From IMG/VR virus record IMGVR_UViG_3300029893_000001, positions 328,329-392,328 of that record: DNA of 64,000 nt; one strand, given 5' to 3'. Shown in pieces: positions 31,877 to 64,000 of this stretch. Below the pieces are notes generated by a model. It saw only the letters and a program-made list of their open reading frames with translations, searched no databases and was not told the DNA's origin. The stretch's first letter is position 1. Every line of letters begins with the position of its first letter. A program made the position numbers and the translations under genes.

Positions 31877-31981
31877 TATTCGGTCCTCCCTTGTGCCGAC
31901 TAGTATCGGGTGGGTTCGCTCCTCTTAAATGGAGAAGCCCCCGGGCATCCGCCCGGGGGCTATTCCCTTGTTGCCCGGAAA

Positions 31982-32452
31982 TCAGCCGGGCAACAAATCG
32001 TTCAGCTCGTCGAGGAAATCGTCGACCTCCCCGTCCGAAGCCTCCGCGGGATCCGGGGTCGGCTCGGGAGCCGGAGCGGGGGCCGGCGCCGCCTTCGGAG
32101 TCGCCTTCGGTGCGGCCGGAGGCGCCACCGGAGCCGCTCCGCCGAGGCTCGACAGATCCAGATCGTCGATCCCCAGGGACAGCGCCGGAGCGCTGGCCGG
32201 CGGAGGGGTGGGCGCAGCCTTCGGAGCCTCGGGAGCCTTCGCGGCGCCCTTGCCCTTGCCCTTCGGACAGCCCCGGGCGTTGTGCCCCTGCTCGCCGCAG
32301 GTGCCGCAGGTGTAGGTCGGGGCCGGAGCCGCCATCACCGCCGCCGTGGCCAGCGTCGAGATGGGAACGACCGCGAAGCCCATCGCGCTCAGCGCCCGCA
32401 CCACCTTGCCGAACTGCTCGTCGGTCATCTTGTCGGTCATCTTCTTGCTCAT
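31982..32452 (-). CDS. CCHC zinc-knuckle protein with a Pro/Ala linker and acidic C-terminal tail
   Basis: CGTCGEQGHNARGC is C-x2-C-x4-H-x4-C; own promoter (32497-32512) and hairpin (31925-31961). Confidence 0.8.
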   Translation of the reverse strand: MSKKMTDKMTDEQFGKVVRALSAMGFAVVPISTLATAAVMAAPAPTYTCGTCGEQGHNARGCPKGKGKGAAKAPEAPKAAPTPPPASAPALSLGIDDLDLSSLGGAAPVAPPAAPKATPKAAPAPAPAPEPTPDPAEASDGEVDDFLDELNDLLPG

Positions 32453-32722
32453 GATCATGATTCCTTTCCGGCGAGGCGTCCCTCGCCTCATTTCCTAGTA
32501 TCGAATGGGTTCGTTTGGCCGACTAGCGCCGCTGACGCTCCGCGTGACGCCGCGCCAACTCGGCGCGGGCCTCCTCGATCGCTAGAATCTCGTCCACGTC
32601 CAAACCGTCGTACATGGGGCAAAAACCTCCGTTCGCCGTCTAATATCGGCCGGGTTCGCCCAATTGACATTTCGAGAGTAGCTTAAACGGGCTTTGGCCC
32701 GGGTTTCCCCGGGCCGCCCGCC

Positions 32723-33139
32723 TCACGCCGCCTTCGTACGGGCGGCCAGCTTGGCGGCGACCGCCTTGCTGTACGCCGCCGCCTTCTCGTAGACCGCCGC
32801 CGCCAGGTGCAGATCGAGCCGGCCGATGCTCGACCCGAGGCACACGTGGCCCTCGGAGGGCACCCCGAGCACCAGCTTGTTCCCCTGGCCGCAGATCCAC
32901 CGCTGGAGACGCTGCCGGTTGCCGCTCGACGCCTTGGCCACGAAGACGTCGTGGACCGCGATGCGCGCCGGGCCCGGCGTCCCGTCCTCGCCGTGCATCG
33001 AGCGGAGCACGATGCCGAAGGACTTCACGCCCTCCCCGGCGGAGCCGACCTGCGCGCCGGTCGCGGCGTCCAGGTGGAAGACCAGGGCGGGGGCCAGCGG
33101 GAGATCGCGGGTGACGTCGTACGTGTTCTTCTTCGCCAT
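32723..33139 (-). CDS. Hypothetical early protein
   Basis: Own promoter (33187-33202), RBS and downstream hairpin-TTTAA; strong GC3 bias. Confidence 0.75.
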   Translation of the reverse strand: MAKKNTYDVTRDLPLAPALVFHLDAATGAQVGSAGEGVKSFGIVLRSMHGEDGTPGPARIAVHDVFVAKASSGNRQRLQRWICGQGNKLVLGVPSEGHVCLGSSIGRLDLHLAAAVYEKAAAYSKAVAAKLAARTKAA

Positions 33140-33210
33140 GATTCACCATTCTTTCTGGGGCGCCGTGCCCCGTCGTTGTACCGACTAGTATTGTCAGGGT
33201 TCGGAAAACT

Positions 33211-33344
33211 TGGCGGAGTCACATCGATGCATGGGTGGAGCCCGTGTCTCTGTGCAAGTGACTCGCTCCCGACGAGTATGTCCCTACGTGCAGCTTGCCG
33301 GTAACGTAGAGGGAGACCGCCGGGCGGCTATCATTCCTCCGCCA
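33211..33344 (-). ncRNA. Candidate small structured RNA
   Basis: Starts just after promoter 33351-33366; 8-bp terminal stem TGGCGGAG/CTCCGCCA plus internal hairpins; only a 16-codon ORF follows the RBS-like sequence. Confidence 0.4.
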
Positions 33345-34241
33345 TTCACTACTATCAGCCGGGTTCAAATCCCTCTTAAACGCGAGAAGGCCCGGGGCTT
33401 TTGCCCCGGGCCCCATCACCCGACCTTCCGAATCGGGGCGACGATGACTCGACTACGCAGCTCGCGCCGCTCTCGGAGCTTGCGGATCTGCAAATCGAGA
33501 AGCGCAATCGTGGCATCGAGCATTTCCCTTTCCTCGGGATCTTGCTCCCTCACACGCTTGCGCAGCGCCTCCGCTTTCTCACAGAGGAGTGCACGAATGA
33601 CATGATCGTTCATTATTCACCTCCCACCAACTACTATCGAGCGGGTTCAATTGCTATTCGGGAGTAGGGTCACGCGGAAATAGGAAAATGCCGACCAATT
33701 AATTTTGACCCATAAGTGGTAAAGTATGTAACCGCTCGTTCACACATTCTCACGCTTAAGTACGTATACGCTCGCAGCCATTGCGAGCTTGCTTGTACCC
33801 ACTGCGAAATAGCCTAATAAGGCATGTACGCTCGCAGCCATTGCGAGCGGGGCGGGGCGTTAAAAGGCTACGGGCCCCAGAGGGGCCCTATCTCCTCGCA
33901 GCCGTTGCGAGAAATGGTCCTAGTAGTCCATCCGTCCGCTCGGAATGGGACCCGAGCCGAGCAGGTAGGCCAGCGCCTCGACCCACGCCGCTCGTCCAGC
34001 GGCCAAGTGAGACCTCAGGACGAAAATGCTTCCCAACGCTCCGACTTGCAGATCGAGAGCAAGTCGAGCCTGGTGCTCGTGGTAGCGTGCCGAGCCGACC
34101 GCTAGAGCAGCACGAGCACACTGATCACCGAAATCTTTCTCCGTGGCCATCGTTGCCTCCTCGCCGATTATTATCAGCTGGGTTCAATTCGTGCGCGGTT
34201 AAATGCGTAACGGCTGCGAGGAATCTCGCAGCCGCTGCAAA

Positions 34242-34401: not shown

Positions 34402-34428
34402 GAACCGTTCTCGCAGCCGTTGCGAGAA

Positions 34429-34767: not shown

Positions 34768-34892
34768 GATTATTCCTCCTGGGCCGGAGCCCGTTGCCCC
34801 GACTAGTATCGGCCGGGTTCGGCCGACTAGGGAATTAAACGCGCAACGGCTGCGAGATTTCTCGCAGCCGTTGCTTGTGTAGAGTCAGTGGG

Positions 34893-35075: not shown

Positions 35076-35123
35076 TTTGCATTTCCCTCGCTAACTATTA
35101 TCCGCAGGGTTGCTTGTGTAGAG

Positions 35124-35402: not shown

Positions 35403-36404
35403 TCGGCTTTCCTCCTCAGCGACTATTATCGTCGGGGTTCACGTCCGACACGAAAAGCGCGTTAAATGAAACAACGGCTGCGAGAAATCTCGCAGCCGTT
35501 GCGTGCCTTGGGAACTTTGGAACTACAGGACCACCCATCCCCAGAAGACGGCCCAGGCGATGAAGCGGATCGGCCAGCGGGTCCAGGAGTCATTCTGCCA
35601 GAGGCAGAGCAAAATCCAAGTGACCCCGAACGCCGGCCAGAGCGTATTGAACCACGGGATCACCTGGACGATTCCGCACCAGATCCAGTACGTCAGCAGG
35701 AAGCACGTGGAAATGTTGCAGAAGAACTCCACCCAATCCGAGATTTCCATCTCGTTGTGCGGGGTGTAGATCGTCCGGCCCGTCTCGTGGTCCCTGTAGA
35801 CCTTGTACGTGGCGCGGAGCGGGCGGATGCTCGGCTGGAGCCGGCGGATATTCTTCGGGTTGGGCATGGGTCGTCTCCTCGCTGACTATTATCAACAGGG
35901 TTCTCGCAGCCGTTGCGAGAAATTAAAGTAAGATGGCCCCGGGTTTCCCCGAGGCCCTCTTTTCATCCGAGCGGCTGACTGAGAGCCACCGCACGGCGTC
36001 GAGCGTGGATCGGATTGCTCTTCCAGAAGCGAGCCCAGAAATCGCGCTCCGCTTGCTTCGCCTCGTGCTCATTCCTGTACTGCAATTGAACGAGCAGATC
36101 GGCGTATTCCCCATCCCACTTGGGGTCGTACTCCAGCGACTCACGAACGAGCTGGAATCCCTCCGTTTCGACGACCGCCTCGGCCCGGAGCGCCCGGAGT
36201 CGGTACGGGACGAATCGGAGGAGCGCCTCCCGATAGTCAGCGTCGTTTGTGATGAATCGGCTCGCCTGTCGGAGCCAGTCGGCAGCCGACTGTTGCTCTT
36301 TCATGACTCGCCGATACAGCACCTCGGAGAACGGGATGATTTCTGCCATTCAACCTCCCTTCGCCGATTATTATCAGCAGGGTTCTGTGCGGCCGTGAAT
36401 GTCC

Positions 36405-36592: not shown

Positions 36593-37163
36593 TTTAGTAT
36601 CGCCAGGGTTCTCGCAGCGGCTGCGAATCCCTAAATCCCGATCCAGTAGTTGTCCAGGTCGCTCAGCTTCACGCTGGTGATCTCGGGATTGTGGTCCGGC
36701 AGACGTTGCTTGGCGAGTCGACGGACGTGAACATCGAACTCCTTTTTGTCCCTCGTTCGCGTCAGGACCGTGAATCTGTCCACCGCCGACTTCCCGTCGA
36801 CTTCGTAGCACAGTTCGATGAGATACTTCATTTTCCGCCTCCTCGCCGAATATTATTGGCAGGGTTCTCGCAGTGACGGCGAGAATTTAAATTGAGAAAG
36901 GCCCCTCGCGGGGCCCGTCTCAGTCGTCGCGGAGGCACGGGGTCGGTCCCCCGCAGAATCCGCAGCGCCCCGGATTGTGGTACGCTGAGAGCACGTGATT
37001 GTTGGCCACGTGCTCCGGCTCGAAATAGTCTTCGGTTTCCCGAACTTCCATTCCTTCCGGGGCTTGCTCGTCGTCGAGGAGACGCACGGCTCGTGCCGTG
37101 GTCTTGCCGGGGTTGGCAATGTAGTAGCGGATGGTCATGCCGAATATTATCGGCAGGGTTGAA

Positions 37164-37236
37164 TCGGACCGGTGGGATTCGAACCCACAACGTCCCGGTT
37201 ATGAGCCGGGGGCTCTAACCATTGAGCTACGGTCCG
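37164..37236 (-). tRNA. tRNA with CAT anticodon (Ile2-lysidine or Met), no encoded CCA
   Basis: CGGACCG-TAGCTCAATGGTTAGAGC-CCCCGG-CTCATAA-CCGGG-ACGTT-GTGGG-TTCGAAT-CCCAC-CGGTCCG-A; full cloverleaf. Confidence 0.95.
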
Positions 37237-38702
37237 ATGGTTTTCACTAGGTTACGTTTCGCGTTACTTTGTGCGAACGATTCAGGCCCAGATCCCAGGC
37301 GCCGAATCCGGTTGCTCCGGGATCGGGATGTATTGGTTTCCCACGAATCCCGCCGCCGCGTCCAAGGCGACCACACGGGGGAATGTCACCGCAGGGTGCG
37401 GCTCATCCTCCCAATAGGCTTCCCACGCAGCCAGAGCGAGATACTGCAAGAGCAGTTTTTCCATTATTCACCTCCTCGCCGTATCCATACGGGCTTGCAC
37501 CACTTTTCTCAATGACACGAGGCCTTGGGTCGCTGTCTTCCCACAAACGTATGGGTGCAACCCATACGTTTTCGCCTTTGGTGTACACGAGAATCAACCT
37601 TGGACAAATTGATCGGGTGTTCCGCAGTTCCACACCCTCAAGGGTGTGCCCCAACGGGTCGGCTCCTCGGTCCAGTCGAAGTGGATCCGGCGGGAGTTCC
37701 CCTTCCGAATCCAGAACTTCCCCCTCGCATCCTGAGGCCGACTCCACACGTCGGCCGAGACGTTCATCGAGTCCAGGAGATCGTTGACGATTCCGTGGAA
37801 ATCCACCCAATCCTGCCACTCCAGAAAGCGAGCCTTCGGCTTCTTGCGGGGCGGGAAAGTGACGACGCACTCTCCGGGGTGATTCCCGCAGTATTCCTTC
37901 GCGGTCACGAGGCGGACGCGCTTCAGAAGGATCGTCTGGCCATCGACGCACGATTCCACGTTGAAGCGACCGTCGGCCCGCACCTTCTTTTGAAGGGCTA
38001 CGTGGATTCGCTCGACGTCGCTGCCGTCGAGCACCTTGATTGAGTACGGCATGATTATTCCTCCGTGGGTTGGTCCAGCGAGCTTTAGTATCGGGAGGGT
38101 TCTCGCCGTGGCTGCGAGAATTAAACTGGAAACGGGCCCCGGGAAAACCCCGGAGCCCGTTTTCTAGAACTCGCCCTCGTCGTCGTCCACCGCGTCGAGT
38201 GCGTCTGGACGTCCGAGGCCGCCGTCGGGCCCATGAGGGTGGTACCTCTTTTCCTTGTGGATGTCCAGAAAGAAGAGCGCCTCTTGCAGCGAACGCACCC
38301 TCTTTGGATTCTTCGTCCGCACCATTTTTGGGTTCGTCAGGGAATCCTTCGAGACCCACTCCTCGACGAGAAAGAAAACCTCCGGGCACCCATCGAGAGG
38401 AGCCGAGGGCCCGGTAATATTCTCGATGACGGTCGAGATTCGGCCTCGCTCGTCCGAGAAAATCACCGTGGTCGGCTCGAAATCGGTGAGCTTTTCGATG
38501 ATTTCACTGTAGGTGAACTTTCGCATTTGTTCCCTTCTACCGACGGTATCGGTACTCCTCGTCCACCTCTTGCTGCGTGGGCTCCCTTCCGAGCCTCTTG
38601 CGCAGATCGTCGCGGGCCGCGTTCCACTTGCGCTCGTCCTCCGCCCTTTCGAGAGCGCAGGCCGAGCATCCCATCATCATGCACATGGTCGCCTCCCTCT
38701 GA

Positions 38703-38917: not shown

Positions 38918-39023
38918 CTCGCCGTCGTGGTCTACTATCAGGAGGGTTCAACTCCTCTAATTAAACAGAGAAAGGGGCCTGTGGCCCTTCTCCCTGTTTT
39001 GGAATCTCGCAGTGGCGGCGAGT

Positions 39024-41505
39024 CTAGTAGGCCCGGCTCACCACCGGAAGCCCACGCAGTTCCTCGACTATTCCCTTGAAGGCGACCTCGACCTCGCCGG
39101 TGTCGGGCAGCTCGACCGTGCGATCGATTCCGTAGAGATCCTCCAGGAACTCCCGGAATCCAGGCGTGTCGCCGCGGAACGGCTTGTTGAGAAGCCACTC
39201 CGCGAACTCTTCTCGGCGATTCCAATCCAGATCCTTGGCGACCTGCGTACCGATTGCCACCCCGAGGATACAATATCCTCGGACATCCCAACGATCGATG
39301 AACGACCTCGCGCTGCTGTCGCTCGAAAAGACTCGACACGAGTAGTGCACGTGCCAGTAGCCCCACTTCGCCGCCGGCTCGCTCTCCCTCACGTCGTCCA
39401 TGGAGGCGTAGGAACCCATTTCCGGGCCCCACCCATCCGACGACGGCATCGCCCTGACGAACGTATGGGCACTGTCGTAGCGATTTCGGATGAAGCTGCC
39501 GTCCGGCATCTTGAAGGCGTTGATCTGGTGGCAGTGCGGGTGCTTGAGATCCTCCTCCAGCGACTGCTTTGCGCTCTCGACGCTGCGCTCGCAAAAGAAC
39601 CTCCACGAGAGCACCGCGCTGATGAGCCGCTGCCAGACCTTGTGAGAAATCTTGTTGTTCATTGTTCTGCCCTCCTCGCTCTAACTATTATCGTCGTCGA
39701 CTACGATCCGATGCTCCCCATTCGCGGCGCATGCTGAATCACGTAGGAGACGCCGGTCAAAACCCAGCCAGCGGGAGTGTGGCCGTAGATGTTCACGCAG
39801 AACGTGAACACCAACACGGCGACGATGACGTACCACCTCTTGAGGGTTTCCACGATTGATTGACCTCCTCTCGCCGAACTATTATCGACGGGGTTCGCCG
39901 TCATATCGAGAACGACGAAATGCCCTCCGGGACTTACCGGAGGGCATTTCGTCAGGATTCCACGATCTTGCCGGCGTCGAGATCCACGAAACCGATGTGG
40001 ACGTACTTCCAGCCCGTGCTTCCAATGAGCGTGGGCGAATCCGGGAGACGCTCCGGAGCCTCGGCGAACGTGCAGCCCTCTCCGACGAGCAGGAACGCCA
40101 AGTGGCCGAATCCAGAGGAATCCACCGCCGCGTTTTGGTAGGCTGCCCAGCGAGTTCGCTCGCGCTGTCGAGCGCGCATTTGGCTCAGGACTTCCTCGTC
40201 GATTTGGAGATCATTGGTCGTCATCATGTCCCTCAGTACAGGTTCACGTAGACGCTATCGCCCACGATTTCCATCGCGTCCCGGACCTTTTGGGCCGCGT
40301 TCATTTCCTCGACTTCGCAGCGATCCCACGTCGCTCTCTGGTCGAGCACGTCGCGGAGAGCAGCCGGCGTGACGAGCACCACTTCGGTGTCGCCCCAGGT
40401 GAACGCGTTGGTGATGAGTTCCGAGACGATCTCGTATTCCTCTTCGGAGAGGAACTCCGAGAGCGTGATGAACTGGCACTCGAAAAGCGTCGGTCGCTTC
40501 ATGGCCTCCTTTCGGTCGCAGTCTTCGCAGTTGCCTGGACCGCGAAACTCGAAGACAGTCGGACTGATTTCCTGGCCACACGTCTTGCAATGATATTCGG
40601 CCATGTTTTTCTCCTCGCCTATTATTATCGACGGGGTTCGTGGTAACGACAAACGCAGAATAGGCCCCGAGTTTCCCCGGAGCCTATCTCTCTCACTTGT
40701 TCCTGAAGTACGTCTCGTACCCGATGTCCTTGGTGGACATCAGATTGTGCTTGAGATTCATGGACTCGCCGCTGAGCATGCGGCGCATTTCCTTCTCGCT
40801 GACGAAATCCACCCACTTCTCGTCGTGTTCGGGCCGAATCATGTGGTAGTTCTCGGGGTGAGAGCCCGTCGAATCGTAGTCGGTCCACTTCATGATCTGT
40901 TGCGTGGTCCATCCGACCGCCGGCATTCCGGTCATGTCGTAGCACCCGCGATTGACCAATTCGGTGGCCACCACTTCGTGCCCTTCGATGACCAGCTTGA
41001 CGATCGGCCAGTCCTCGGGATCGAGAACGTTGTCGCTGAGTCGGGCGTAGAGAATCGGCTTTCGCATCTTACCTCCTCGTTAAACGCGAAAAGGCCCCTT
41101 TCGGGGCCTCTGCTATTCCTCGGGAGCAAGTAGCAGCATGGTTTCGGCGGCGTGAGTCAGCGCACCCCACTGGAGTGCTTCCTCCTCGCACACCGCCTTG
41201 TACGCGCGTTGAAGTACACGCAGAAGCACACGCTGCTCGAATTGAATCCGAGCCTCGCCGATCATTTCGTCGAGGGGCGGGCCCTCGTCGTTGTAGTAGG
41301 CGATGCACGCCGGCTTCATCTGCGGGAACGTCTCGCAGTACAGCCAGTCGAGCACGCTCTTGTATTCGTCTTCCCTCGGAGGGGCGATCTTTCGCAGCGC
41401 CTTGGCGTGTTTGCTCGTGCGGAGCCACGCCTCGACCTCCGGGAAGAGGCTCGACGTGAGAGGCCCTCGAACGACGCAAACGCACACCATCTGGAGAGCA
41501 CTCAT
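39024..41505 (-). other. Early-region hypothetical ORFs
   Basis: 39024-39662, 39952-40227, 40233-40604, 40693-41067 and 41113-41505, mostly with clear GGAGG/GAGG RBS. Confidence 0.7.
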
Positions 41506-41531: not shown

Positions 41532-41604
41532 TGACCCCAACGGGATTTGAACCCGTGTTCTCGCCGTGAAAGGGCGGCGTCCTAGGCCACTAGACGATGG
41601 GGCC
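41532..41604 (-). tRNA. tRNA-Glu (TTC), no encoded CCA
   Basis: GGCCCCA-TC-GTCTAGTGGCCTAGGAC-G-CCGCC-CTTTCAC-GGCGA-GAAC-ACGGG-TTCAAAT-CCCGT-TGGGGTC-A; own promoter 41620-41635. Confidence 0.95.
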
Positions 41605-41882
41605 GTGTCCTCGCCGATTACTATCGGCGGGGTTCACTTCTTTCCGTGGGTGGACTCCCACCATTTCAGATACTCGTAATCCTTTCGGTCGAGCATCCGA
41701 TAATAGGACTCGGGGTCCGCGTCGAGTTGGTATTCATTCTCAGCGGCGTTTTGGTCGACGCCAGGAAATGTCTCCTCGTACCTGACTCGTCGATTTTTCT
41801 TACGCTGTTTCTGCTGTCGTCGCCGTCGCATGGGATATTATTCCTCGGGTTAACGCCGAATAGGCCCCGAAAGGCCATCGGC

Positions 41883-44904: not shown

Positions 44905-44995
44905 TACCAATTCCTCCGGGCCAGAAGTTGGCACTTAGTATCGCCAGGGTCCAACCCCTTAAGCAAGAAAAGGGCGGCCCCGAAGGACCGCCAAT

Positions 44996-50900: not shown

Positions 50901-53554
50901 ATCTCGTCGTTCACTTCCCGAAGGAGCGTGCGGATTTCATCCTGAAGCCGCTCGTCCTCCTGCTTTTCCCTCTCGGTGAGGCCACGATTGCAGTCGTGCT
51001 CAGCGAGCATTCGCATTCTCGACGCCTTTCGGCAGACGATCTTGCTGATCTCACTGAGACGATGCATGTCGACGTTCTTGGCGTTGTACTCGCCGAGGTG
51101 CTTTCGGAACTCGCGTTCGTTTTCGCTCATGATTGATGACCTTGGTAGTTCAGTTGAACTTCGGATGGTCCTCGTCCTGCTCTTCCTTGGGGACCTTCAC
51201 CTTGTCCTGCTTCATGACACGCCTCCTAGTCAGCCGTATTCAGTGTGTTGTCCGGGGCGGCGGGCCTGTCACTCCCGTAGTAAGGAGCCGCGTAGTAAGT
51301 CTGCGGACCCTCCCCAGACGACAGGTTGCTGGCGTCGACCAACATCGCTTCGATGGTTTCGAGCGTATCGGTGGGCAGCGTGGCGGCACGCTTCGCCAGC
51401 TTTTCGCAAAGCTCCTGTACGTGTTCCCTCAATTCGGTTGACACGTTCACGTCCCCTGATCGATGCGTTCGAGAATCTTGTCGTACATTCCGGAGGCCAT
51501 CACCTTGTTCCACCAGTCGGGTGGATAGGCGTGACCGCGGCGAAGCTTCATCACGTCGCATGCGTACCGAAGATCGGCGTACACCTTGACCTCTTCGAGC
51601 GCCCTGATCTCTTCCGGCAAAAGCGGCGTCTTCGGATCGAGCTTGCCGAGCTTCTCGGCGGTGCAATGAGCGCTCAGCCGAATGCTCCGGTAGTAGGAGA
51701 CGGTCGCGCTGTCGAGCGGTACTCCCTTGGCGGGATCGATGTTGAGGGTCTCGACCTTGAGTTCCTTCGTGAGCTTTTCCATGATCATCATTTCCCTTTC
51801 ACCAGAGATCCCAGCGAACTAGGCGAGCCTTGTATTCCTCACGAATCAAATCCAGCGTGTCGAGGAAGTGGAGAACTTCTTTTCGATAGCTGAACTTGTC
51901 CGAGTCCAACTCGATTTTGTATCGAGCTGCGTCCTCATCTCCCCGTTCGAGATAGAAGATGACCGCGTTGAGAACGGAGTGTGCCTCGTTCGGATTGTCC
52001 GCCATGAACTTCTTAATGGCTTCGACCCGAACGAGATCGTACGGCGAGACATCGGCCATCAGACTGGCTCGTCGAGAAGCTCCGACGCCTTGGCTGCCAT
52101 GCGCATCGAGAGACGCTCGCAGCGCAAGTCGCCGCCTTCGGGAGCGAAACCTCCCTTGCGACGCCACTCTCTGTAGTTCGCGAGGAACTCCTCTGCCTCT
52201 TCGAGATCGCCGTCTTCGATGGCGCTTTCAGCGCAGTCGAGTGCTGCTTGCGGGTCCATTATTCACCTCTTTCAGTCTAGAAACACGCGGTTCGGACCTG
52301 GCTCGTGATCCTCACTAGGAAAAACTTCGAACATGCGATTCGCCCATTCAATGTCCCGCACACTTCCAGTGCTGAGTGTCCACTTGAAAGGGACTCGCGA
52401 GAAGACGGTACGAATCGGATAGCGATCCAGGCCAGCGGCGGCTCTCCACCGCTCCGCGTCATGACGTGTTCGGAAGACGTATTCGGCCGTCCCGGGAGGA
52501 CGCGAACGCCAGACGATATAGCCGCGGGCCAATTCTGGTGCGTTGGATTGACGGCCCTCGCAAGTGTCGCACACTACGGTGAGCAGAAGCAACACCATTT
52601 TGTTGCCGCACTGATCGCAGTACATATCTCCCCTCCTCACGTCCTCGGAACGAGATCGAGCGCCAGATTCAGCGCCTTGAACATCCCCTCGTCGGACGGA
52701 ACCTGGTAGGTGATCGGCTCCGGCTCGACACCACCGAGCTGCTCCAGCTCCTCCCTCGTGAAGAGTCTCCGGATGGTGGCATCCCATTTGACCCAGACCT
52801 CGCCAGGCTTTTGTTCCTTTGCTGGGGGCTCGATGCTGACAAGCCACTCTCGGCCATCCGGTCCCGTGATCTCGGCGGTGATTTTGTGATAGATGATCAT
52901 TCCCATTTGCTCACCTCGCTTGCCGATTAATATCGGCAGGGTCCAAACGACGAAAGGGCCCCATTGGGACCCTTCGTCAGTTGGCATCGGGTGACGCTAC
53001 TTCTTCTCCTGCTGAAGGCGAAGCAGGTCGCCGAGCGTGGGCTGTTTGTAGCTCTTATCCCGACAGCCGCTTCGGAAGTCGTAGCGCTCTTTTCGCTCGG
53101 CCTCCTCTTTGGCTTTCTGTGTGCAGCGGCAGTGCGCTTCGTAGCGGCCATACCCGTAGGGTTCGTAGTCTACGGTGACTACTTCTCCGCACTTCGAACA
53201 CACCTTGTCGTCATCCATTGTCATGTATTTCTTTTCCACCGTGGGACCATCCAAGCCAGTAGTATGGCTCGTATCCAGGAGAGCACAAGGGTTTTGCTAC
53301 TCCTGCGACTACCTTGTGCATGTATCCAAGCCGATAGGCTTGGTGCATTTCGTCCGTCCAGGGGCGTGGGAAGTGGCGATCCGCTCGGCGGCCCACCTGA
53401 ATTCCCTCGGCACTCACGGATTCGATTTCCGGTAGGAGTGCCGCAGCCTGAGCGTCGGCGTCCGAAGGCCAGATTGCGAAGTCGCCGTTGATTTCTACGC
53501 CGTACTCGGAGCACAGACTCACGAGTGCAGCGAGGAATTCTCGTCGGTCCTTCA
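44996..53554 (-). other. Run of about 25 small early hypothetical ORFs, many acidic
   Basis: e.g. 45298-46158, 46609-46953, 47557-47856, 47920-48288, 48301-48564, 48611-49093, 49113-49367, 49471-50016, 50125-50334, 50384-50665, 50762-51130, 52059-52259, 52637-52906; punctuated by promoter motifs and hairpin-TTTAA elements. Confidence 0.7.
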
Positions 53555-54010: not shown

Positions 54011-54125
54011 GATGATTACCTCCCGCTGATTTTTGTCCTCGGTTAGTATCGGCAGGGTCCGGTTCAATCAAAATCTCCTGGCAGTTATTTGGGGACGTCA
54101 CTTCCCTCCACCGGAGAATATTGAT

Positions 54126-54961: not shown

Positions 54962-54998
54962 AAAAAAAGGGCAGGCCATTTCTGGCCTGCCCTTTTTT
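54962..54998. terminator. Bidirectional intrinsic terminator between convergent genes
   Basis: A-tract-GGGCAGGCCA-TTTC-TGGCCTGCCC-T-tract. Confidence 0.9.
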
Positions 54999-56617: not shown

Positions 56618-56649
56618 TATTGCCTCCTCACTTTTATTATCAGCCGGGT

Positions 56650-57006
56650 TCACGCCTTGTGGATCCAGACCTCACCGAGGACCTTTCTGATCCTCACCAG
56701 GATAGAAGAGCATCCTGATGGGATGTCTTTGTCCCATCCATTCTTTCTGGCCTCGGTGGTGCTCTTGAAAACCGACAGCGACTTCAAGAGCTGTGGCATT
56801 CTCCAGTCAGGAGGGGCCGTGAAAAGAAACGTTCCCTTCTGTGGAATAGAGATAGCGGCCTCTTCGTCGGAAAGTTCCCCGATAAGAACAGTCCCAAAGT
56901 CTTGCACCTGAATCAGGGAGGTCCCCTTGAAGGCACAAGTACGAGGAAGGTAGCTCACAAAATCTGCAAGATTGATCGGAGCAACATCGAGATTCACTCT
57001 ATTCAT
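56650..57006 (-). CDS. Hypothetical protein with a possible S4-like RNA-binding motif
   Basis: QLLKSLSVFKSTTEARKNG resembles the S4 LxxxGxxxSxSEARR helix pair. Confidence 0.4.
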   Translation of the reverse strand: MNRVNLDVAPINLADFVSYLPRTCAFKGTSLIQVQDFGTVLIGELSDEEAAISIPQKGTFLFTAPPDWRMPQLLKSLSVFKSTTEARKNGWDKDIPSGCSSILVRIRKVLGEVWIHKA

Positions 57007-58343: not shown

Positions 58344-59258
58344 TGATTACTTCTCCTTCGGCGACCCTTTGCCGCCTTGTGCTGACTACTATCGGCGGGG
58401 TTCACGCTTCTACGGAGAAGCGGCGCGGCGAGCGTCGTGGAGCTTCGAGAGCAGTTCCTTGAATTGCCGACGCTTGGTTTCTGGAGTGGCTCCTCCGAGC
58501 ACTTTTGTGTCCTCGTTAATGCGCTCCATATGTTCGATCAGGAGCAACAGCTCTTCTAGGGAAAGCTCTAGATAGACCATCTCACACCACTTGCGTCTTG
58601 TCGAGATCGAGTTCTGACGCTACCAGATCGTAGGTGTCGGTGGGTAGAGCGGGTCCTCCACCGTCGGCAAGAATCGCATTGACCTTATCGAAGGCTTCTT
58701 GGATTCGTCGTTCAGAGTTGGGGGCAAAGTGCTGCTCTGCTAGAGCGCAGTGGAGACACTTGCGATCGCAGGAGGCGCACACTCGACGCACGACCTTAGC
58801 AGCCTCCCGGTACCCAACGCTCCTATCCTCTCGAATCCTGTTCATCTCGGCAAGTGCCTTGGCTCTTCCGTGCTCATAGAAGAACTTACGGTCGGAAAGA
58901 AGACGATCTTCGTAATCCTTCCTTTGCCTTTCGAGCACCACTTCCCACATCTTACGATTCCTCGTGATGTAGAACATCGCGATCGCGGAGAGTATCCCCA
59001 GCAGAGCAAGCACTCCCAGGGTACTTCCAGTAACAACCTCCACCACTGTTTCCATAACGGATTCATCCTTTCAGATGAGATCTCTTTCGATTCCGTACTC
59101 GGCGACTCTGACTCCACGAATGCGTTTGGCCCTCTTCTCTAGAGCCTCTTCGAGTTCGTCGAGAATCGCCTCAGCCTTGCTCTTGCTCGGGGTCCGCAGG
59201 ATCTCCTTGATCGGATCTCCTGATTCATCGTAGGCAATGATATTGTAGGCCCACTTCA

Positions 59259-59753: not shown

Positions 59754-60671
59754 CGCTTTTCGCCTTCCTCGATTTCTCTGATCGATCGGATGTGGACGTG
59801 CTCGTACGTCTTTCCCCATTCCTCACGGGCCACTGACTCTGCCGACTCTCGGTCGGGAGCATCCACTTCGAGATCCGGTAGCATGTAGAAGATTCCGATA
59901 GCCCCGACTTGGCGCCCTTCGGCACGGACCTTGAACCTCATGGCTTTTCGTCTCCGCTTATTCAGCTCTGAATTACGTATCATCTGGCGCGGCACTAGGC
60001 CAACTATCAAGAAAGTCGACAAGAGACTTAAGGATCTTGTAGTCTTCCATTCCTAGTCTCTTTTCACAGAAAGTTACTAGTTGCTGGAAGGTCTTGATGC
60101 CACTAGCCTCCTTAAGCAAAGCACGTTCTTCTTGTAGTGTGATGTCCTCGTTGGTAAACATCTCACCAACTATTGGCTTGATACGCTGATTTACGTACGC
60201 CAAAACTAGCTTGTAGTTTGAACTACCCATCTTGTTCCAATTCGCTACTATCGTCTGGGTTCGTTAGCGCCGAGGCATCATCCACGGCCACGCGAAAAGG
60301 CACGTCGCGTAATCAAGAAGCGTAGGGCGCGGACCCTCAGGCGGGCTAGTGATGAATGCCGCTAGGCACCACCACAATCCAGCAGCCAGATACAGAAGAC
60401 CAAGACCAGCGAGAATCCAAAGGGGAATGAACATCAGTAACCTCCACTCCTTAAACGCAGAAAGAGCCGGGGTGGCCGACTCTTTCTACAGGACTATGAA
60501 AGTTTCTGACCGACGTGGGGACGCTCGCCCCTCACTTGCTCGACGAATGTCGGTAGGCCGGTCTTTCGCTGTGCCTTTCGTGCACATTCCTGAGCCTCGG
60601 AGAGCAGAGCCTCCCCGAAGACTCCGAGGACAATGCGACCTTCGCTGGTCACGACGTGCCAGGTTGGCTTG

Positions 60672-61028: not shown

Positions 61029-61357
61029 CGTCAGTCCTCCGAGATTCCGAGAGCGACTCGCTCGACTCGCGTGAGCTTTGCGATCGCCTGTTCTCGGAGC
61101 TTCTTGACGTTTACGTGAGACATCTTCATCGTGATGTCTTCGACGAGGAAGTATGACTTGGAATCATTGTCATCTTCGTCGAGCACCGCGATGGCCTTCT
61201 TCTCTCCAGCGTAGGAGCGATACCCGCCGCCCTCTTTCTGGTAGGCCATCGCTTCCGCCTTTTGGAGGAAGTACTTCGGAGTGTGGCGTCGGTCTCCGTC
61301 GGTGTCGTCCACCTGATAGACCGTGACCAGATTTGCTGTGAGTGGCATCATGATTGA

Positions 61358-61936
61358 TTAGACCTCCTCTTCTTCGTGAGCATTCCAGTTGGCGACGAAG
61401 ACTGCCACCATGGATGGCGTCCAGGTTTCCCGGAAACCCTCGCCCTTCTCAGAATGGACCCAATTCAAGAACGCGTCTTGGGATTCCGATTGGGCCACAT
61501 CCGCCGGAACCTCGACCATCCCAGTATCCCAACCGTATTCGGTCAGGAAGTAGACCTCGATCTTCTTGAAGGACGGGATGGTACGGAACTTCAGGGCGTG
61601 AGCCTTGAGGTACACGGTGTGCTCGTCGCCCCAAAGGTCTCCCCGCTCGCCGTCGTACTCGACGTCGGAGTAGTCATCCTTCCAGCGAGCCCCGACCAGA
61701 GGGAAGCCTTCCATCTCGGAGAACACCTTGACCACTTCACGATCCGGGAACGTGTGGAATTCCCGGTGGTCGTGATGCATGACCGTCCCGATGCACTTCA
61801 CGATCTTCGGGAAGTACTCGGGATTCGTGAGGCTGCGATGAGCACCGACTCGGATGCGGTATCGCTTCCCCTGGAAATCGTACTCGGCTTCGAGATCGTA
61901 GCTGACCACGAACTTCGGATTCTCGTTATCGCTCAT
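61358..61936 (-). CDS. Hypothetical early protein
   Basis: GGAGG RBS; promoter 61971-61986. Confidence 0.7.
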   Translation of the reverse strand: MSDNENPKFVVSYDLEAEYDFQGKRYRIRVGAHRSLTNPEYFPKIVKCIGTVMHHDHREFHTFPDREVVKVFSEMEGFPLVGARWKDDYSDVEYDGERGDLWGDEHTVYLKAHALKFRTIPSFKKIEVYFLTEYGWDTGMVEVPADVAQSESQDAFLNWVHSEKGEGFRETWTPSMVAVFVANWNAHEEEEV

Positions 61937-61988
61937 GATTATTCCTCCGCTGCTGCCCTGGTTTCGCTTTACTATCAGCAGGGTTCGG

Positions 61989-62453
61989 TTAGCAGTGGTC
62001 CCAATCGTATGCAACGAGTCGACCGTCTACAGTGCGACCCACTTGCCCACCATCGATTCCCCATGTCCAATCTGGTTTCTCAGACCAACCAACATGTTCG
62101 ACATATTCCATCCGGAGTACAGCGATGCCAAGTTCTTTTCCCAAACTGTCGTCGAAGTTACATCGGGCAAGGAACTCGGGCTGTTCATCCCAAGAGTTTG
62201 CCTCGTAGAAGTTGGCGTGGAAACCGGTCTCATTGAGAGGGATCTTGATTACTTCGGTAGGGCTGATGCGAAAGCAGATCCGATTTCGTCCCTCTCCAAT
62301 CTCGGGACCGAAGCGGTCTCGGGCCTTTTCTATTGCTTCTCGGCAAACGCTTCTGAGTTTGTTTTCATCCTCAACTTCGACGATGAAGGACGGCTGCCTA
62401 AGCAGATTGATATCTTTGGAAGCCTTCGTCTTAGGTACGTATTTCTTAGGCAT
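61989..62453 (-). CDS. Minimal protein-kinase-like fold protein
   Basis: IGEGRNRICF..VIKIP...N..EA...LRMEYV resembles a kinase N-lobe and hinge; the C-lobe is very short. Confidence 0.45.
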   Translation of the reverse strand: MPKKYVPKTKASKDINLLRQPSFIVEVEDENKLRSVCREAIEKARDRFGPEIGEGRNRICFRISPTEVIKIPLNETGFHANFYEANSWDEQPEFLARCNFDDSLGKELGIAVLRMEYVEHVGWSEKPDWTWGIDGGQVGRTVDGRLVAYDWDHC

Positions 62454-63865
62454 CGTGAACTGGACACTGCCTTGTGATAGGAAGGTCTGCGTCGTTGCAG
62501 TTGCAGTAATAGATTGAACCATCCTCTACGACGGCCTCATCCGGTCCAGGAATCGGGGGACATTCTGAAATCGGTTCGCTCCACCACCATCCCTTCCAGG
62601 AAGTCCCTTCAACAAGTACGTGGTCAAGCCCCCGTACAGGATGCTGCGGGCAAAATAGGGCGCCGCTGGGTAGGCTCGCCACTGTAAGCAACCCAACTAC
62701 ATCCCAATTATTAGCCCGAGTCCAGTATACCCCAGGCTGATTCGGCATCACGCGCTGCCACATAAGACCTCCTTAAACGAGCAAGGGCCCCGCAGGGCCC
62801 ATGCTCAGAACGTCGCCGAGCCCGTACACCAGGCTTCAGCAATCTCTTGGAAGGGATCACTGTCGGGGTCCAGGTTCCAGTCGACTTGCTTGGCCAACTG
62901 CGGATTGGCTTCGATGATCCTGTCGATGGTGCTGACGTCCGAGTAGTCGATCAACTCGGACTCTGCCGTGACGATCATCTCGTTCAGATCGTTACTCACT
63001 TCGTCCAGCAAACCATCGACTTCGATGTAATCGTATCCAGCGAAGTGTAGCTCGTAAGACGGAGTGAGCGAGCAGATGTGGACGTGCAGATTGCGATCGA
63101 ACACGTACACTGTCCAGATCGCAGTCGTCATCTCCTGGATGTCTTCTCTCCAGAATCCGCGACAGGGAACCTTGACCAGCCAGTAGTCCGGCGGGACCTT
63201 GCGCTCCTCGGCGACGTCTTCCATGATTAGTCCTCCCACGGATCCCGATGGCGTCGAGGCCCGTAGATGTGAGTGTAGATGATACTATTGCCCCAAGGAT
63301 CGTTGCATCACTCCTGGAAGGGGACTTCCTGCTGGAACCCCTTTCGCTCCAGCAGATCCGTCATGGCATCCGCCATCTTCTGGGCCATTTCGTAGCCCAG
63401 GAATGTCGTGCCCAGCGAATCCTTGAACGTCTTGTCGGATCCCTGCCAACGAGACACGAATGTGAGGGTCTCGTGCGCTCGTTCGCTTTCTCCCGTCGCT
63501 TCTCTCGACAGGTAGATTCGCGCACCGTAGCCAGCCGCAGCCGGTGTCGTGAAGAACAGCTTGTGCTTTCTCATTATTCATCCCTCTCGATGGAAGCGGG
63601 TGCGGAGGCTTCAGCACTCGATGAAGAATCCGCCGTGGACCGTCATGACATTCGCGAACTGCTCCTCGTAGATATCGAGGACCTTCTGCGAAGTCTCGCC
63701 GAGTTCCACCGGCCTGAGCATGGCTCGGTAGATCCGAGACAGCCTGAGCCCCTCCCGTCGGAGAAGCGTCTTGAAACTCTCCTCCGTCAGGATGTATTCC
63801 ATGTCGAGATACGTACGCATCCAGCCGTTGAGGATACGTTCACGGTCCTTGTCGAGGTTCAACAT
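62446..63865 (-). other. Hypothetical early ORFs
   Basis: 62446-62763, 62805-63224, 63308-63574 and 63611-63865 with RBS; promoter 63900-63915. Confidence 0.65.
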
Positions 63866-64000
63866 TCTGCCCTCCCGGCGCCAGCCGTTGCTACTATTTA
63901 CTATCGGCTGGGTTCGCTACTCGCTCACGTGCGATGCGATCCAACCAGGACTGGTTCTCTGGAGAGTCGATCCGGGACACAACCTTTTCGACCCACTGCT

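What the first reader, a model, noticed from the sequence alone, without database searches (positions are those of the whole stretch)
31902..63915. Unusual compact promoter GAACCC-N4-GATAnT with no -35 box, about 42 copies
Seen: fixed 4-nt spacing, one strand only, placed before RBS-led genes, tRNA-Glu and the ncRNA candidates. Apparent leaderless starts (ATG at 37138, 41831 and 25309) lie 5-9 nt after the GATAnT hexamer, placing it at about -10 and GAACCC at about -22 to -17. This matches neither sigma70 -35/-10, ECF AAC-N16/17-CGT nor sigma54 GG-N10-GC. Inference: recognised by a phage-encoded, possibly virion-packaged RNA polymerase, sigma factor or activator.
Basis: partly seen in the sequence, partly recalled or inferred. 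Interest (0 to 1): 0.68.

Follow-up and report, generated by a model that had tools for sequence, protein, structure and literature searches.

The report
Megaphage-specific promoter without a -35 box
An uncultured 392-kb phage marks about 75 transcription units with one 18-base signal that looks like a bacterial -10 promoter box joined to a phage-specific upstream extension, and two related giant phages use their own versions at the same gene positions, so it is very probably a private promoter code, although its reader is not proven.

Summary
GAACCC-N4-GATAnT occurs 33 times exactly in the window and 41 times with one mismatch or fewer. It occurs 64 times exactly in the whole 392,328-bp virus record, or 75 times by weight matrix. 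Every copy is on the minus strand, where shuffles give 0.01.

The full signal is yGAACCCTGCCGATAnTAr, about 27 bits, with nothing conserved where a -35 box would lie. Sites are intergenic and often follow GC-rich terminator hairpins. They precede SD-led genes (start codon 19-22 nt on), SD-less ATGs (4, 7 or 9 nt on) and three tRNAs.

Two complete relatives carry their own variants:
- G001: AAAGTCCGnCGATrcTA
- G004: CAACCCTGGCCAyACTA

These variants sit upstream of orthologous genes. The positions matching sigma-70 A-11 and T-7 never vary.

No T7-like RNA polymerase gene was found; that test was validated on T7. No beta/beta' domain was found either, but that test is weak. The genome encodes one primary-like sigma factor.

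Best reading: a -35-less, extended -10-type promoter for a multisubunit RNA polymerase, with phage-specified specificity, most likely through that sigma factor. It is a new variant of a known kind.

The parts
3929..3944 (-). class I promoter site, exact
   Evidence: next called start 90 nt downstream
12625..12640 (-). class I promoter site, exact (consensus TGCC spacer)
   Evidence: SD-led 180-aa ORF 20 nt downstream
20355..20370 (-). class I promoter site, exact
   Evidence: 129-aa ORF 55 nt downstream
21666..21681 (-). class I promoter site, exact
   Evidence: SD-less ATG 7 nt downstream
25319..25334 (-). class I promoter site, exact
   Evidence: SD-less ATG at 25309 (9 nt downstream) opens the 96-aa ORF 25019-25309
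28501..28516 (-). class I promoter site, exact
   Evidence: overlaps the start of a called ORF and the downstream unit is unclear
31902..31917 (-). class I promoter site, exact; low-coordinate edge of the dense cluster
   Evidence: strong hairpin plus TTTAA upstream; SD-led ATG about 25 nt downstream
32497..32512 (-). class I promoter site, exact
   Evidence: 158-aa ORF 38 nt downstream
32642..32657 (-). class I promoter site, exact
   Evidence: hairpin plus TTTAA upstream
33187..33202 (-). class I promoter site, 1 mismatch (CAATAC)
33351..33366 (-). class I promoter site, exact
   Evidence: -40.9 kcal/mol hairpin region upstream
33633..33648 (-). class I promoter site, exact
   Evidence: SD-led 65-aa ORF 19 nt downstream
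34170..34185 (-). class I promoter site, exact
   Evidence: repeated GCAGCGGCTGCGAGA hairpin upstream; ORF 19 nt downstream
34805..34820 (-). class I promoter site, exact
   Evidence: terminator-like hairpin 34843-34874 just upstream; 112-aa ORF 37 nt downstream
35097..35112 (-). class I promoter site, 1 mismatch (CAACCC)
   Evidence: ORF 21 nt downstream
35425..35440 (-). class I promoter site, exact
   Evidence: terminator-like hairpin 35471-35502 upstream; 92-aa ORF 22 nt downstream
35888..35903 (-). class I promoter site, exact
   Evidence: hairpin 35935-35956 upstream; SD-led ATG 20 nt downstream
36370..36385 (-). class I promoter site, exact
   Evidence: 128-aa ORF 20 nt downstream
36596..36611 (-). 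class I promoter site, exact; no ORF close by (possible small RNA)
   Evidence: no Rfam family matches
36852..36867 (-). class I promoter site, 1 mismatch (CAATAA)
   Evidence: ORF 20 nt downstream
37146..37161 (-). class I promoter site, 1 mismatch (CAACCC), directly after tRNA-Met
   Evidence: SD-less ATG at 37138, 7 nt downstream, 72-aa ORF
38087..38102 (-). class I promoter site, exact
   Evidence: 152-aa ORF 34 nt downstream
38934..38949 (-). class I promoter site, exact
   Evidence: hairpin 38971-38990 plus TTTAA upstream
39881..39896 (-). class I promoter site, exact
   Evidence: -41 kcal/mol hairpin region upstream
40624..40639 (-). class I promoter site, exact
   Evidence: 123-aa ORF 19 nt downstream
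41620..41635 (-). class I promoter site, exact, driving tRNA-Glu
   Evidence: tRNA-Glu 41532-41604 starts about 16 nt downstream
41837..41852 (-). degenerate copy TAACCCGAGGAATAAT (2 mismatches)
   Evidence: ATG at 41831, 5 nt downstream, opens a very basic small ORF
43466..43481 (-). class I promoter site, exact
   Evidence: 184-aa DUF3228 protein 33 nt downstream
44204..44219 (-). class I promoter site, exact
   Evidence: hairpin plus TTTAA upstream
44937..44952 (-). class I promoter site, 1 mismatch (GGACCC)
   Evidence: hairpin 44973-44992 upstream; 207-aa protein with an L7/L12 C-terminal domain 32 nt downstream
46194..46209 (-). class I promoter site, 1 mismatch (CAACCC)
   Evidence: 286-aa ORF 35 nt downstream
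46997..47012 (-). class I promoter site, exact
47889..47904 (-). class I promoter site, exact
   Evidence: 99-aa ORF 32 nt downstream
49405..49420 (-). class I promoter site, exact
50703..50718 (-). class I promoter site, exact
   Evidence: hairpin plus TTTAA upstream
52929..52944 (-). class I promoter site, 1 mismatch (GGACCC)
   Evidence: ORF 22 nt downstream
54045..54060 (-). class I promoter site, 1 mismatch (GGACCC)
56636..56651 (-). class I promoter site, exact
   Evidence: 238-aa ORF 18 nt downstream
58388..58403 (-). class I promoter site, exact
60247..60262 (-). class I promoter site, exact
   Evidence: ORF 16 nt downstream
61971..61986 (-). class I promoter site, exact
   Evidence: 192-aa ORF 34 nt downstream
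63900..63915 (-). class I promoter site, exact; high-coordinate edge of the window cluster
   Evidence: the ortholog of its 84-aa gene in G004 also carries the G004 variant upstream
41532..41604 (-). tRNA-Glu(UUC), transcribed from site 41620-41635
37163..37237 (-). tRNA-Met(CAU), immediately upstream of site 37146-37161
34843..34874 (-). 14-bp GC-rich hairpin followed by GCGTTTAATT; terminator-like, repeated family
35471..35502 (-). second copy of the same 14-bp hairpin, terminator-like

Best explanation
The motif is the main ('class I') promoter of an uncultured, distantly PaBG-like megaphage. It drives the dense block of small, terminator-insulated genes in window 31.9-64 kb and about 40 further units elsewhere in the genome, including tRNAs.

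Proposed mechanism: a multisubunit, bacterial-type RNA polymerase carrying a sigma-70-family subunit reads it.
- GATAnT acts as the -10 element. A-11 and T-7 are the bases flipped into sigma region 2 pockets.
- The contiguous upstream ten bases, GAACCCTGCC at about -22 to -13, replace the missing -35 box as the second specificity determinant.
- Transcription would start roughly 5-10 nt after the hexamer. This gives either very short SD-containing leaders or leaderless mRNAs.

Specificity is set by the phage, not by a generic host consensus. The prime candidate reader is the phage's single primary-like sigma factor (450 aa, G000 246993-248345, - strand, outside the window), bound to host core enzyme.

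Shown: the motif, its strand and position rules, its lineage-specific variants at orthologous positions, the sigma gene, and the absence of a recognisable T7-like polymerase.

Inferred: promoter activity, the start site, and above all which protein reads it.
For: 1. Statistics. There are 64 exact and 75 matrix sites on one strand and none on the other, against 0.01 in shuffles. The motif carries 27 bits over 19 positions, and no upstream column exceeds 0.28 bits.
2. An unbiased 7-mer enrichment in regions upstream of genes recovers the motif words as the top hits.
3. Position. 56 of 75 sites have a CDS within 120 nt, and 3 sit 16-24 nt before tRNAs. ATG-plus-ORF starts peak at 19-22 nt (33 cases, SD-led). 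SD-less starts peak at 7 and 9 nt, 6 each against 1.04 expected per offset.
4. A GC-rich hairpin of -15 kcal/mol or stronger lies within 70 nt upstream of 46-51% of sites, against 14-20% at random positions. The figure is 63% in the window cluster, and the hairpin is often followed by TTTAA. Intrinsic-type terminators fit a multisubunit polymerase.
5. Comparative. Complete relatives G001 and G004 lack the exact motif. They carry 77 and 49+10 copies of their own 18-nt variants in the same register. AA(-21,-20), C-17, G-15, A-11, T-7 and A-6 are invariant, while -22, -19, -18, -16 and -12 differ.
6. 10 of 16 (G001) and 9 of 14 (G004) orthologs of promoter-proximal genes also have the local variant upstream. 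The background is 8.7% and 7.3%.
7. A second, independent motif, (c)TGTAAAr, shows a sharp peak of SD-less ATGs 7-8 nt downstream. That is the same distance as the 7-nt SD-less ATG peak after class I hexamers, which supports a -10-type geometry for both.
8. Reader. There is one sigma-70-family gene (Pfam region 2, 31.6 bits against a cut-off of 24). It aligns to SigA/RpoD through regions 2-4 (E 3e-20). A low-confidence model (mean pLDDT 59.6, under 50 across residues 247-317, which include region 2) matches E. coli sigma-70 over its whole length at TM about 0.34.
9. The region 2.3-2.4 sequence FVGHARWWIRQ matches the -10-reading core as I recall it from E. coli.
10. Region 4.2 has a 4-residue deletion in the first helix of its HTH, and the protein ends just after AERLRQ. 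This fits promoters without a -35 box.
11. The T7-type polymerase family PF00940 is absent from all three megaphages, while the same search scores 360 bits on T7.
Against: 2. The sigma gene lies in the 125-kb block that has no class I site (G000 184-309 kb). It sits among virion and replication genes, behind a conserved SWIM-like ORF and with no promoter of its own. How it would be present when the presumed early cluster fires is unexplained.
3. The sigma helices expected to read -12 and the extended -10 region (WWIRQSML, IRVSSNTWQHYAKLE) are invariant or nearly so in eight relatives. Yet the class I motif differs between lineages at -12, -16, -18, -19 and -22.
4. The invariant class II motif, found in all sigma-bearing relatives, would be an equally natural target for that sigma.
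5. -12 is G or C, not T. The TG sits at -16/-15, one position off the canonical extended -10.
6. SD-less ATGs at 1 and 4 nt fit a start site next to the hexamer better than one 7 nt away.
7. Only three complete genomes were available, so no sigma-residue/motif covariation statistics are possible.
Confidence: 0.45

Rival explanations
1. The host's own primary-sigma holoenzyme reads class I promoters directly, or with a small phage-encoded or injected co-factor that binds the GAACCC half. The phage sigma would then serve the other promoter class, (c)TGTAAAr. The dense cluster would be true early genes, expressed before any phage protein is made.
For: - A-11 and T-7 are what any primary sigma needs.
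- The cluster looks like a classical early region: small ORFan genes, each with its own promoter and terminator.
- The sigma gene lies among class II-type, class I-free late genes.
- The DNA-reading helices of the sigma are invariant, as is the class II motif in all sigma-bearing relatives.
Against: - No known primary sigma uses a contiguous -22 to -6 signal without a -35 box and with G/C at -12 (established knowledge).
- The upstream half differs between related phages while the sites stay in place. A conserved host sigma would not be expected to impose that.
- G004 uses different RBS words from G000 but has the more similar motif, while G001 shares the RBS style but has the more divergent motif.
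- The host is unknown; the GyrA search was uninformative.
Confidence: 0.27
2. An unrecognised phage-encoded RNA polymerase reads the 18-bp signal as one contiguous promoter, as T7-class or N4-class enzymes read theirs, and starts at the conserved purine right after GATAnT. It could be single-subunit or highly diverged, and could be delivered with the DNA.
For: - The signal is contiguous, about 27 bits, and nearly invariant within a genome. Its upstream 'specificity' half changes between relatives while the AT-rich ATAnTA end is kept. From memory, this is the pattern among the T7, T3, SP6 and K11 promoters.
- The base after the hexamer is always a purine: 65 A and 10 G.
- SD-less ATGs occur 1 and 4 nt after the hexamer.
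- Several large conserved proteins (2813, 1687, 1156 and 931 aa) have no family assignment.
Against: - PF00940 is absent in all three genomes, although the same search finds T7 at 360 bits.
- No RpoB or RpoC domain was found. This test is weak, because it found only one phiKZ subunit, at 27.8 bits.
- The 2813-, 1687- and 931-aa proteins have no sequence relative in the PDB, which holds the N4, crAss-like, phiKZ and AR9 polymerases.
- The only conserved DxDGD-like motif, in the 1156-aa protein, looks like a calcium-binding loop.
- The A-11/T-7 invariance and the 7-9 nt spacing shared with class II leaderless starts are explained by sigma geometry and not by this model.
- The motif has no hairpin, unlike N4 promoters.
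Confidence: 0.13
3. The motif is not a promoter but a signal read in RNA or DNA for another purpose, such as an RNA-processing site at the head of each cistron, an antitermination site, or a binding site for a repressor or partition protein.
For: It is strand-specific and intergenic, which an RNA-level site would also be. No direct evidence of initiation is available.
Against: - Strong terminator-like hairpins lie just upstream of about half of the sites, so a new start is needed there.
- The motif precedes tRNAs as well as CDSs.
- No self-complementarity is evident by eye in the 18-nt consensus; this was not computed.
- It keeps the -10 key bases.
- SD-less ATGs cluster at the same distance as behind the independent TGTAAAr motif.
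Confidence: 0.05

Closest known systems
Extended -10 ('TGn') promoters of sigma-70-family holoenzymes, including the -35-less middle and late promoters of Thermus phage P23-45 (from memory)
   Same: There is no functional -35 box. A -10 hexamer with A-11 and T-7 is joined to directly adjoining upstream bases that add specificity. The polymerase is multisubunit.
   Different: The extension here is ten bases long (-22 to -13) and almost invariant. TG sits at -16/-15 instead of -15/-14. -12 is G or C. The extension differs between related phages.
Phage-encoded sigma factors with private promoters: SPO1 gp28 and gp33/34, T4 gp55 (late TATAAATA), phiEco32 gp36 (single -10-like element) (from memory)
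   Same: A phage supplies a sigma subunit to host core enzyme and marks its genes with a consensus that host sigma does not use. The T4 and phiEco32 promoters also consist of one -10-region element only.
   Different: The sigma here is a full-length, primary-like protein with regions 1.2 to 4, not a minimal or ECF-like one. The link between this sigma and this motif is not shown. The motif marks the presumed early cluster, whereas those systems act at middle or late times.
T7-class single-subunit RNA polymerase promoters (T7, T3, SP6, K11) (from memory)
   Same: A contiguous signal of about 17-23 bp, nearly identical in all copies within a genome. Its upstream specificity block diverges between relatives, and its AT-rich end next to the start is conserved. 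T3 even shares the word AACCCT.
   Different: No T7-like polymerase gene is present (validated search). The A-11/T-7 pattern and the 7-9 nt distance to leaderless ATGs fit sigma geometry.
PaBG-like ('Lupandier') jumbo phages (PMC7412058)
   Same: Terminase about 32% identical. DNA polymerase I fused to a uracil-DNA glycosylase domain. A divergent sigma-70 gene and no RNA polymerase genes are described. CTGTAAA is enriched upstream of PaBG genes too.
   Different: PaBG has no class I-like high-copy motif. Its sigma is not detectably related to this one. The paper reports no promoter analysis.
phiKZ/AR9 virion and non-virion multisubunit RNA polymerases and their promoters (PMC7598289, PMC5449584)
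   Same: Jumbo phages that use private, -35-less promoter signals. Early genes are served by a packaged enzyme.
   Different: No beta/beta'-like genes were detected here, though the test is weak. As I recall them, the AT-rich phiKZ and AR9 consensus sequences are unrelated to this GC-rich motif.

Membership tests
sigma-70-family -10 element | Conserved A at -11 and T at -7 of a hexamer | tested here: met
   In G[A]TAn[T], A and T are invariant in 75/75 (G000), 77/77 (G001) and 49/49 (G004) sites, while the other hexamer positions vary.
sigma-70-family -10 element | T at -12 | tested here: not met
   -12 is G in G000 and G001 and C in G004.
sigma-70-family -10 element | Transcription start about 6-9 nt downstream of the hexamer | tested here: inconclusive
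   SD-less ATG-plus-ORF starts peak at 7 and 9 nt, 6 each against 1.04 expected. An independent motif shows the same peak at 7-8 nt. ATGs at 1 and 4 nt also occur, and no 5'-end data are available.
canonical sigma-70 promoter (-35/-10) | TTGACA-like element 16-18 bp upstream of the hexamer | tested here: not met
   No column between -51 and -23 exceeds 0.28 bits in G000, 0.15 in G001 or 0.54 in G004. The consensus scan finds only weak chance-level pairs.
extended -10 promoter | TG at -15/-14 | tested here: not met
   G is at -15 (58/75) and T at -16 (53/75), one position upstream of the canonical register.
ECF sigma promoter | AAC at -35 and CGT at -10, separated by 16-17 nt | tested here: not met
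   GAAC and GATA are separated by a fixed short spacer, 4 nt between the two hexamers.
sigma-54 promoter | GG-N10-GC at -24/-12 | tested here: not met
   No such dinucleotide pair appears in the consensus.
T7-class phage RNA polymerase promoter | A cognate single-subunit polymerase gene (Pfam PF00940) in the genome | tested here: not met
   There were 0 candidates in G000, G001 and G004. The same search scores 360.6 bits on T7.
T7-class phage RNA polymerase promoter | A contiguous, highly conserved signal of about 17-23 bp ending at the start site | tested here: inconclusive
   Contiguity and conservation are met: 26-31 bits over 19 positions. Whether the start site abuts the motif is unknown.
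N4 virion RNA polymerase promoter | Promoter forms a small DNA hairpin | not tested
   No self-complementarity is evident by eye in the 18-nt consensus, but the motif itself was never folded. The hairpins seen lie 15-25 nt upstream of the motif and vary.
phiKZ-type multisubunit phage RNA polymerase system | Split beta/beta'-like genes | tested here: inconclusive
   PF00562 and PF00623 find nothing in the three megaphages. In phiKZ itself they find only one subunit at 27.8 bits, so sensitivity is low. PHROGs and PDB sequence searches of the large proteins gave no polymerase hit.
sigma-70 family (the protein at G000 246993-248345) | Region 2 with the aromatic/basic -10-reading core; regions 3 and 4 present | tested here: met
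   Pfam Sigma70_r2 scores 31.6 bits against a cut-off of 24. NCBIfam RpoD/SigA-type models align over residues 229-447. The profile against PDB SigA gives E 3e-20 over regions 2-4. A low-confidence model (mean pLDDT 59.6) matches E. coli sigma-70 over 460-520 columns at TM about 0.34. Region 4.2 carries a 4-residue deletion.

The most novel reading that the evidence does not exclude
A clade of uncultured megaphages runs most of its genome on a private promoter code. The code is a full-length, primary-like phage sigma factor (or another phage-supplied reader) that needs no -35 box and instead reads a contiguous -22 to -6 signal. The upstream half of that signal has been rewritten in concert at some 50-80 sites per genome as the lineages diverged. 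This would be a set of natural, mutually orthogonal sigma/promoter pairs, and a sigma-based analogue of the packaged polymerases of N4 and phiKZ.
Probability: 0.25. Interest if true: 0.8.

Novelty: new variant of a known kind. Interest (0 to 1): 0.6.

Why it matters
Transcription programmes are known for only a handful of cultured jumbo phages, and for none of the metagenomic megaphages. This work gives a clean, testable promoter map for a 392-kb phage: about 75 class I sites plus a second, often leaderless, class. It also shows that related megaphages keep the sites but change the code.

It would also offer ready-made orthogonal sigma/promoter pairs for synthetic biology. In either case the motif can be used now to delimit transcription units and small RNA candidates in these genomes.

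Tried and rejected
- Near-identical DNA in cultured phages: none found.
- Scan of IMG/VR for GAACCCTGCCGATA: only scattered single chance hits, so not informative.
- Exact motif or core pattern in relatives: absent. This led to de novo discovery of their variants instead.
- Genome fragments G002, G003, G005-G009: no class I-type motif. They mostly cover the class I-free late block, so this says little. A frequent word in G009 proved to be a coding tandem repeat.
- PaBG genome: no comparable high-copy motif, and its sigma is not detected by our profile.
- Second sigma gene: an HMM of the eight sigma sequences finds no paralog at E below 0.5 in three proteomes. The two weak candidates had no Pfam or PHROG support.
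- DxDGD-type catalytic motifs: the only conserved one looks like a Ca-binding loop.
- Promoter in front of the sigma gene: none. A conserved SWIM-like ORF abuts it.
- Host inference from GyrA: about 35% identity to assorted bacteria, so uninformative.
- Sigma structure model: mean pLDDT 59.6, with the region 2 core below 50. It was used only for overall architecture.
- Literature: the PaBG paper describes the sigma but no promoters. The 'moraphage' paper concerns a different lineage.
- All gene calls outside the tools' ORF lists come from my own simple codon-bias caller. They miss some small ORFs.

Full report
**Observation**

The pattern GAACCC-N4-GATAnT occurs 33 times in the window, always on the minus strand, where dinucleotide-preserving shuffles give 0.01. 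Allowing one mismatch gives 41 sites against 0.69 in shuffles. Thirty-five of these lie in 31902-63915.

The window is the last 64 kb of a 392,328-bp IMG/VR virus record (53% GC, rated complete). That record holds 64 exact copies on the minus strand and none on the plus strand. A weight matrix built from them finds 75 sites, again all on the minus strand.

Column counts extend the signal to yGAACCCTGCCGATAnTAr, about 27 bits over 19 positions. The base after the hexamer is always a purine. No column between -51 and -23 exceeds 0.28 bits, so there is no -35 box.

**Anatomy and context**

Genes run almost entirely on the minus strand, except for a plus-strand block at about 262-308 kb. Class I sites are intergenic. 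Fifty-six of 75 have a called CDS within 120 nt. Three sit 16-24 nt before tRNA genes: tRNA-Glu in the window, tRNA-Gln, and a CUA-anticodon tRNA. Sixteen have nothing called nearby.

I pooled the 201 sites of the three genomes described below. ATGs that open ORFs of 60 codons or more then peak in two places:
- At 19-22 nt after the hexamer (33 cases), with a Shine-Dalgarno word.
- At 7 and 9 nt (6 each), without one, against 1.04 expected per offset.

In window 31.9-64 kb there is a site roughly every kilobase. The genes there are small and mostly without family assignment. The GC content there is 55-64%, against 51-56% in the first half of the window.

Sixty-three percent of sites in that cluster have a hairpin of -15 kcal/mol or stronger within 70 nt upstream, often followed by TTTAA. 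Random positions give 14%. The arrangement is therefore terminator, promoter, short leader, gene, repeated many times.

An unbiased count of 7-mers upstream of all called genes returns the motif words as the strongest signal in the genome.

**Relatives**

The phage has no near relative among cultured phages. Several features place it at a distance in the PaBG-like group (PMC7412058):
- Its terminase is about 32% identical to those of PaBG and NCTB.
- Its DNA polymerase I carries a uracil-DNA glycosylase domain.
- It encodes a divergent sigma factor.

Searches with the sigma and the terminase found two complete IMG/VR genomes, G001 (423,825 bp) and G004 (388,485 bp), plus several fragments. None contains the exact motif. 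Each complete genome has its own 18-nt version in the same register:
- G001: cAAA(G/C)(T/C)CCgnCGAT(A/G)cTAa. 77 sites on one strand, none on the other.
- G004: CCAACCCTGGcCA(T/C)ACTAg. 49 sites on one strand and 10 on the other.

Numbering the hexamer as -12 to -7, the invariant bases in all three are AA at -21/-20, C-17, G-15, A-11, T-7 and A-6. Positions -22, -19, -18, -16 and -12 differ by lineage.

The sites are positionally conserved. Sixteen G000 promoter-proximal genes have an ortholog in G001, and ten of those orthologs carry the G001 variant upstream, against a background of 8.7%. For G004 the figures are nine of fourteen, against 7.3%. One orthologous pair has an SD-less ATG exactly 7 nt after the local hexamer in both genomes.

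All three genomes share the same layout. A block of about 120 kb is free of class I sites. It holds DNA polymerase, an SNF2 helicase, terminase, portal, other virion genes, a ribonucleotide reductase and the sigma gene.

**What could read it**

A T7-like polymerase is unlikely. Pfam PF00940 finds nothing in G000, G001 or G004, while the same search scores 360 bits on T7.

Beta and beta' domains are not found either. That test detects only one phiKZ subunit, at 27.8 bits, so it is weak. Pfam and PHROGs assigned ordinary functions to many of the large proteins: gyrase, RIIA, terminase, portal, tail proteins and an M23 peptidase. They gave no polymerase hit. The three largest unassigned proteins have no sequence relative in the PDB.

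The genome encodes one sigma-70-family protein of 450 aa at G000 246993-248345. A profile of eight orthologs finds no paralog. Its features are:
- It aligns to SigA/RpoD through regions 2-4 at E 3e-20.
- An AlphaFold model matches E. coli sigma-70 over its whole length, so it has a primary-like architecture. The model is low-confidence (mean pLDDT 59.6).
- Region 2.3-2.4 reads FVGHARWWIRQSML. As I recall it, E. coli has FSTYATWWIRQAIT.
- Region 3.0 (IRVSSNTWQHYAKLE) differs from that of primary sigmas and is invariant among the eight.
- Region 4.2 lacks four residues of the first HTH helix, and the protein ends right after AERLRQ.

**A second promoter class**

While looking at the class I-free block I found (c)TGTAAA(A/G). 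Called starts peak sharply 7-8 nt downstream of it, 25 of 124 occurrences, and those starts lack a Shine-Dalgarno word.

TGTAAA followed by 8-9 nt and then ATG is present in all sigma-bearing relatives. CTGTAAA is also enriched upstream of PaBG genes.

This class matters here for two reasons. It shows that leaderless expression is normal in these phages. It also places an independent -10-like word at the same distance from leaderless ATGs as the 7-nt SD-less ATG peak after class I hexamers.

**Interpretation**

I am confident (about 0.9) that the motif is a promoter. I am fairly confident (about 0.75) that a sigma-containing multisubunit polymerase reads it. Four observations support that reading:
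- A-11 and T-7 are invariant across lineages while other hexamer positions drift.
- The distance to leaderless starts fits sigma geometry.
- Intrinsic-type terminators flank the units.
- No polymerase gene is found.

The concerted change of the upstream half at conserved sites argues for a phage-supplied specificity determinant rather than a generic host consensus.

Which protein supplies that specificity is open. The phage sigma is the only recognisable candidate, and its damaged region 4.2 suits promoters without a -35 box. Two facts count against it. Its gene lies in the class I-free late block. Its DNA-reading helices are invariant, which fits the invariant class II motif at least as well. 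I therefore put the full statement (phage sigma plus host core reads class I) at 0.45. The rivals stand at 0.27 (host primary sigma, alone or with a co-factor), 0.13 (an unrecognised phage polymerase) and 0.05 (not a promoter).

**Limits**

The host is unknown. Gene starts come from a simple caller of my own. Only three complete genomes carry the motif family, so covariation with protein residues could not be tested. Comparisons with T4, SPO1, phiEco32, P23-45 and the T7-class promoters rest on my own knowledge, not on tests run here.

**Verdict**

This is a real and statistically overwhelming feature. It is a new, lineage-specific variant of the known theme of phage-private promoters without a -35 box. 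Its reader is unresolved, and it comes with a clear set of experiments that do not need the host.

Noticed in passing
G000 281258(+) = L185:1258; G000 254527(-), 210953(-), 40649(-), 29783(-); also in G001, G004, G002, G003, G005, G006: A second candidate promoter class, (c)TGTAAA[A/G], is followed 7-8 nt later by an SD-less ATG, which suggests leaderless mRNAs. Twenty-five of 124 occurrences have a called start at exactly 7-8 nt. It is conserved in all sigma-bearing relatives, and CTGTAAA is also enriched upstream of PaBG genes.
   Followed up: partly
G000 105653-105726 (L176:5653-5726), - strand: A tRNA with anticodon CUA, which ARAGORN calls 'Pyl' and which would read TAG. It is preceded by a class I promoter at 105765. 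The genome carries 44 tRNAs in all. Whether TAG is recoded in part of the genome was not examined.
   Followed up: no
G000 130644-131041 (L177:10644-11041), - strand: A phage-encoded tmRNA with an unusually long tag, ANNVVSLFGNVVANDNGTAEPLPLAA. From memory, the ANNVVS opening resembles cyanobacterial tags, which is a possible hint to the host.
   Followed up: no
window 34843-34874, 35471-35502 and about 34215-34250, - strand: A family of near-identical 14-bp-stem hairpins (GCAACGGCTGCGAGA-loop-TCTCGCAGCCGTTGC) is reused as terminator-like elements between early genes. Shorter TCGCAGCC/GGCTGCGA arms abut several promoters, for example at 35903, 36611 and 38102.
   Followed up: partly
window 44281-44904, - strand: A 207-aa early-cluster protein carries a ribosomal L7/L12 C-terminal domain (Pfam 28.3 bits, cut-off 25.9). 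It may interfere with translation factors.
   Followed up: no
G000 248225-248686 (L009:2301-2762), - strand: A conserved 153-aa ORF with a CxC...CxH pattern that looks like a SWIM zinc finger lies directly upstream of the sigma gene and overlaps its annotated start in G000, G001 and G002. The true sigma start may therefore lie further downstream.
   Followed up: partly
G000 26418-28490 (L172:6418-8490), - strand: A 690-aa protein matches phrog_1735 at E 5.6e-236. It is about 45% identical to proteins in more than 500 phage records, including N4-like phages, phiCbK and Salmonella, Klebsiella and Bacillus phages. It has no Pfam family and no known function.
   Followed up: no
G003 130702(+), 161058(+), 153673(+); G002 10100(-), 25755(-): The fragments G003 and G002 show another upstream word, cTTATCTA, a few nucleotides before ATGs. 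It may be a further lineage-specific -10-like element.
   Followed up: partly
G004, whole genome: The words enriched just upstream of start codons in G004 are AAAGGA, GAAAGG and AGAAAG rather than the GGAGG-type words of G000 and G001. This suggests a host with different ribosome-binding preferences.
   Followed up: no
G000 184527-187412 (L180:4527-7412), - strand: DNA polymerase I is fused to an N-terminal uracil-DNA glycosylase domain, the arrangement described as unusual for PaBG-like phages. The class I-bearing part of the genome begins immediately downstream of this gene in both G000 and G001.
   Followed up: partly
G000 70421-70470: One class I site overlaps a GTAAAA word (GATAGTAAAA). 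It is followed by a perfect hairpin terminator shared with a convergent plus-strand GTAAAA word, so it may be a very short transcript or a regulatory arrangement.
   Followed up: no
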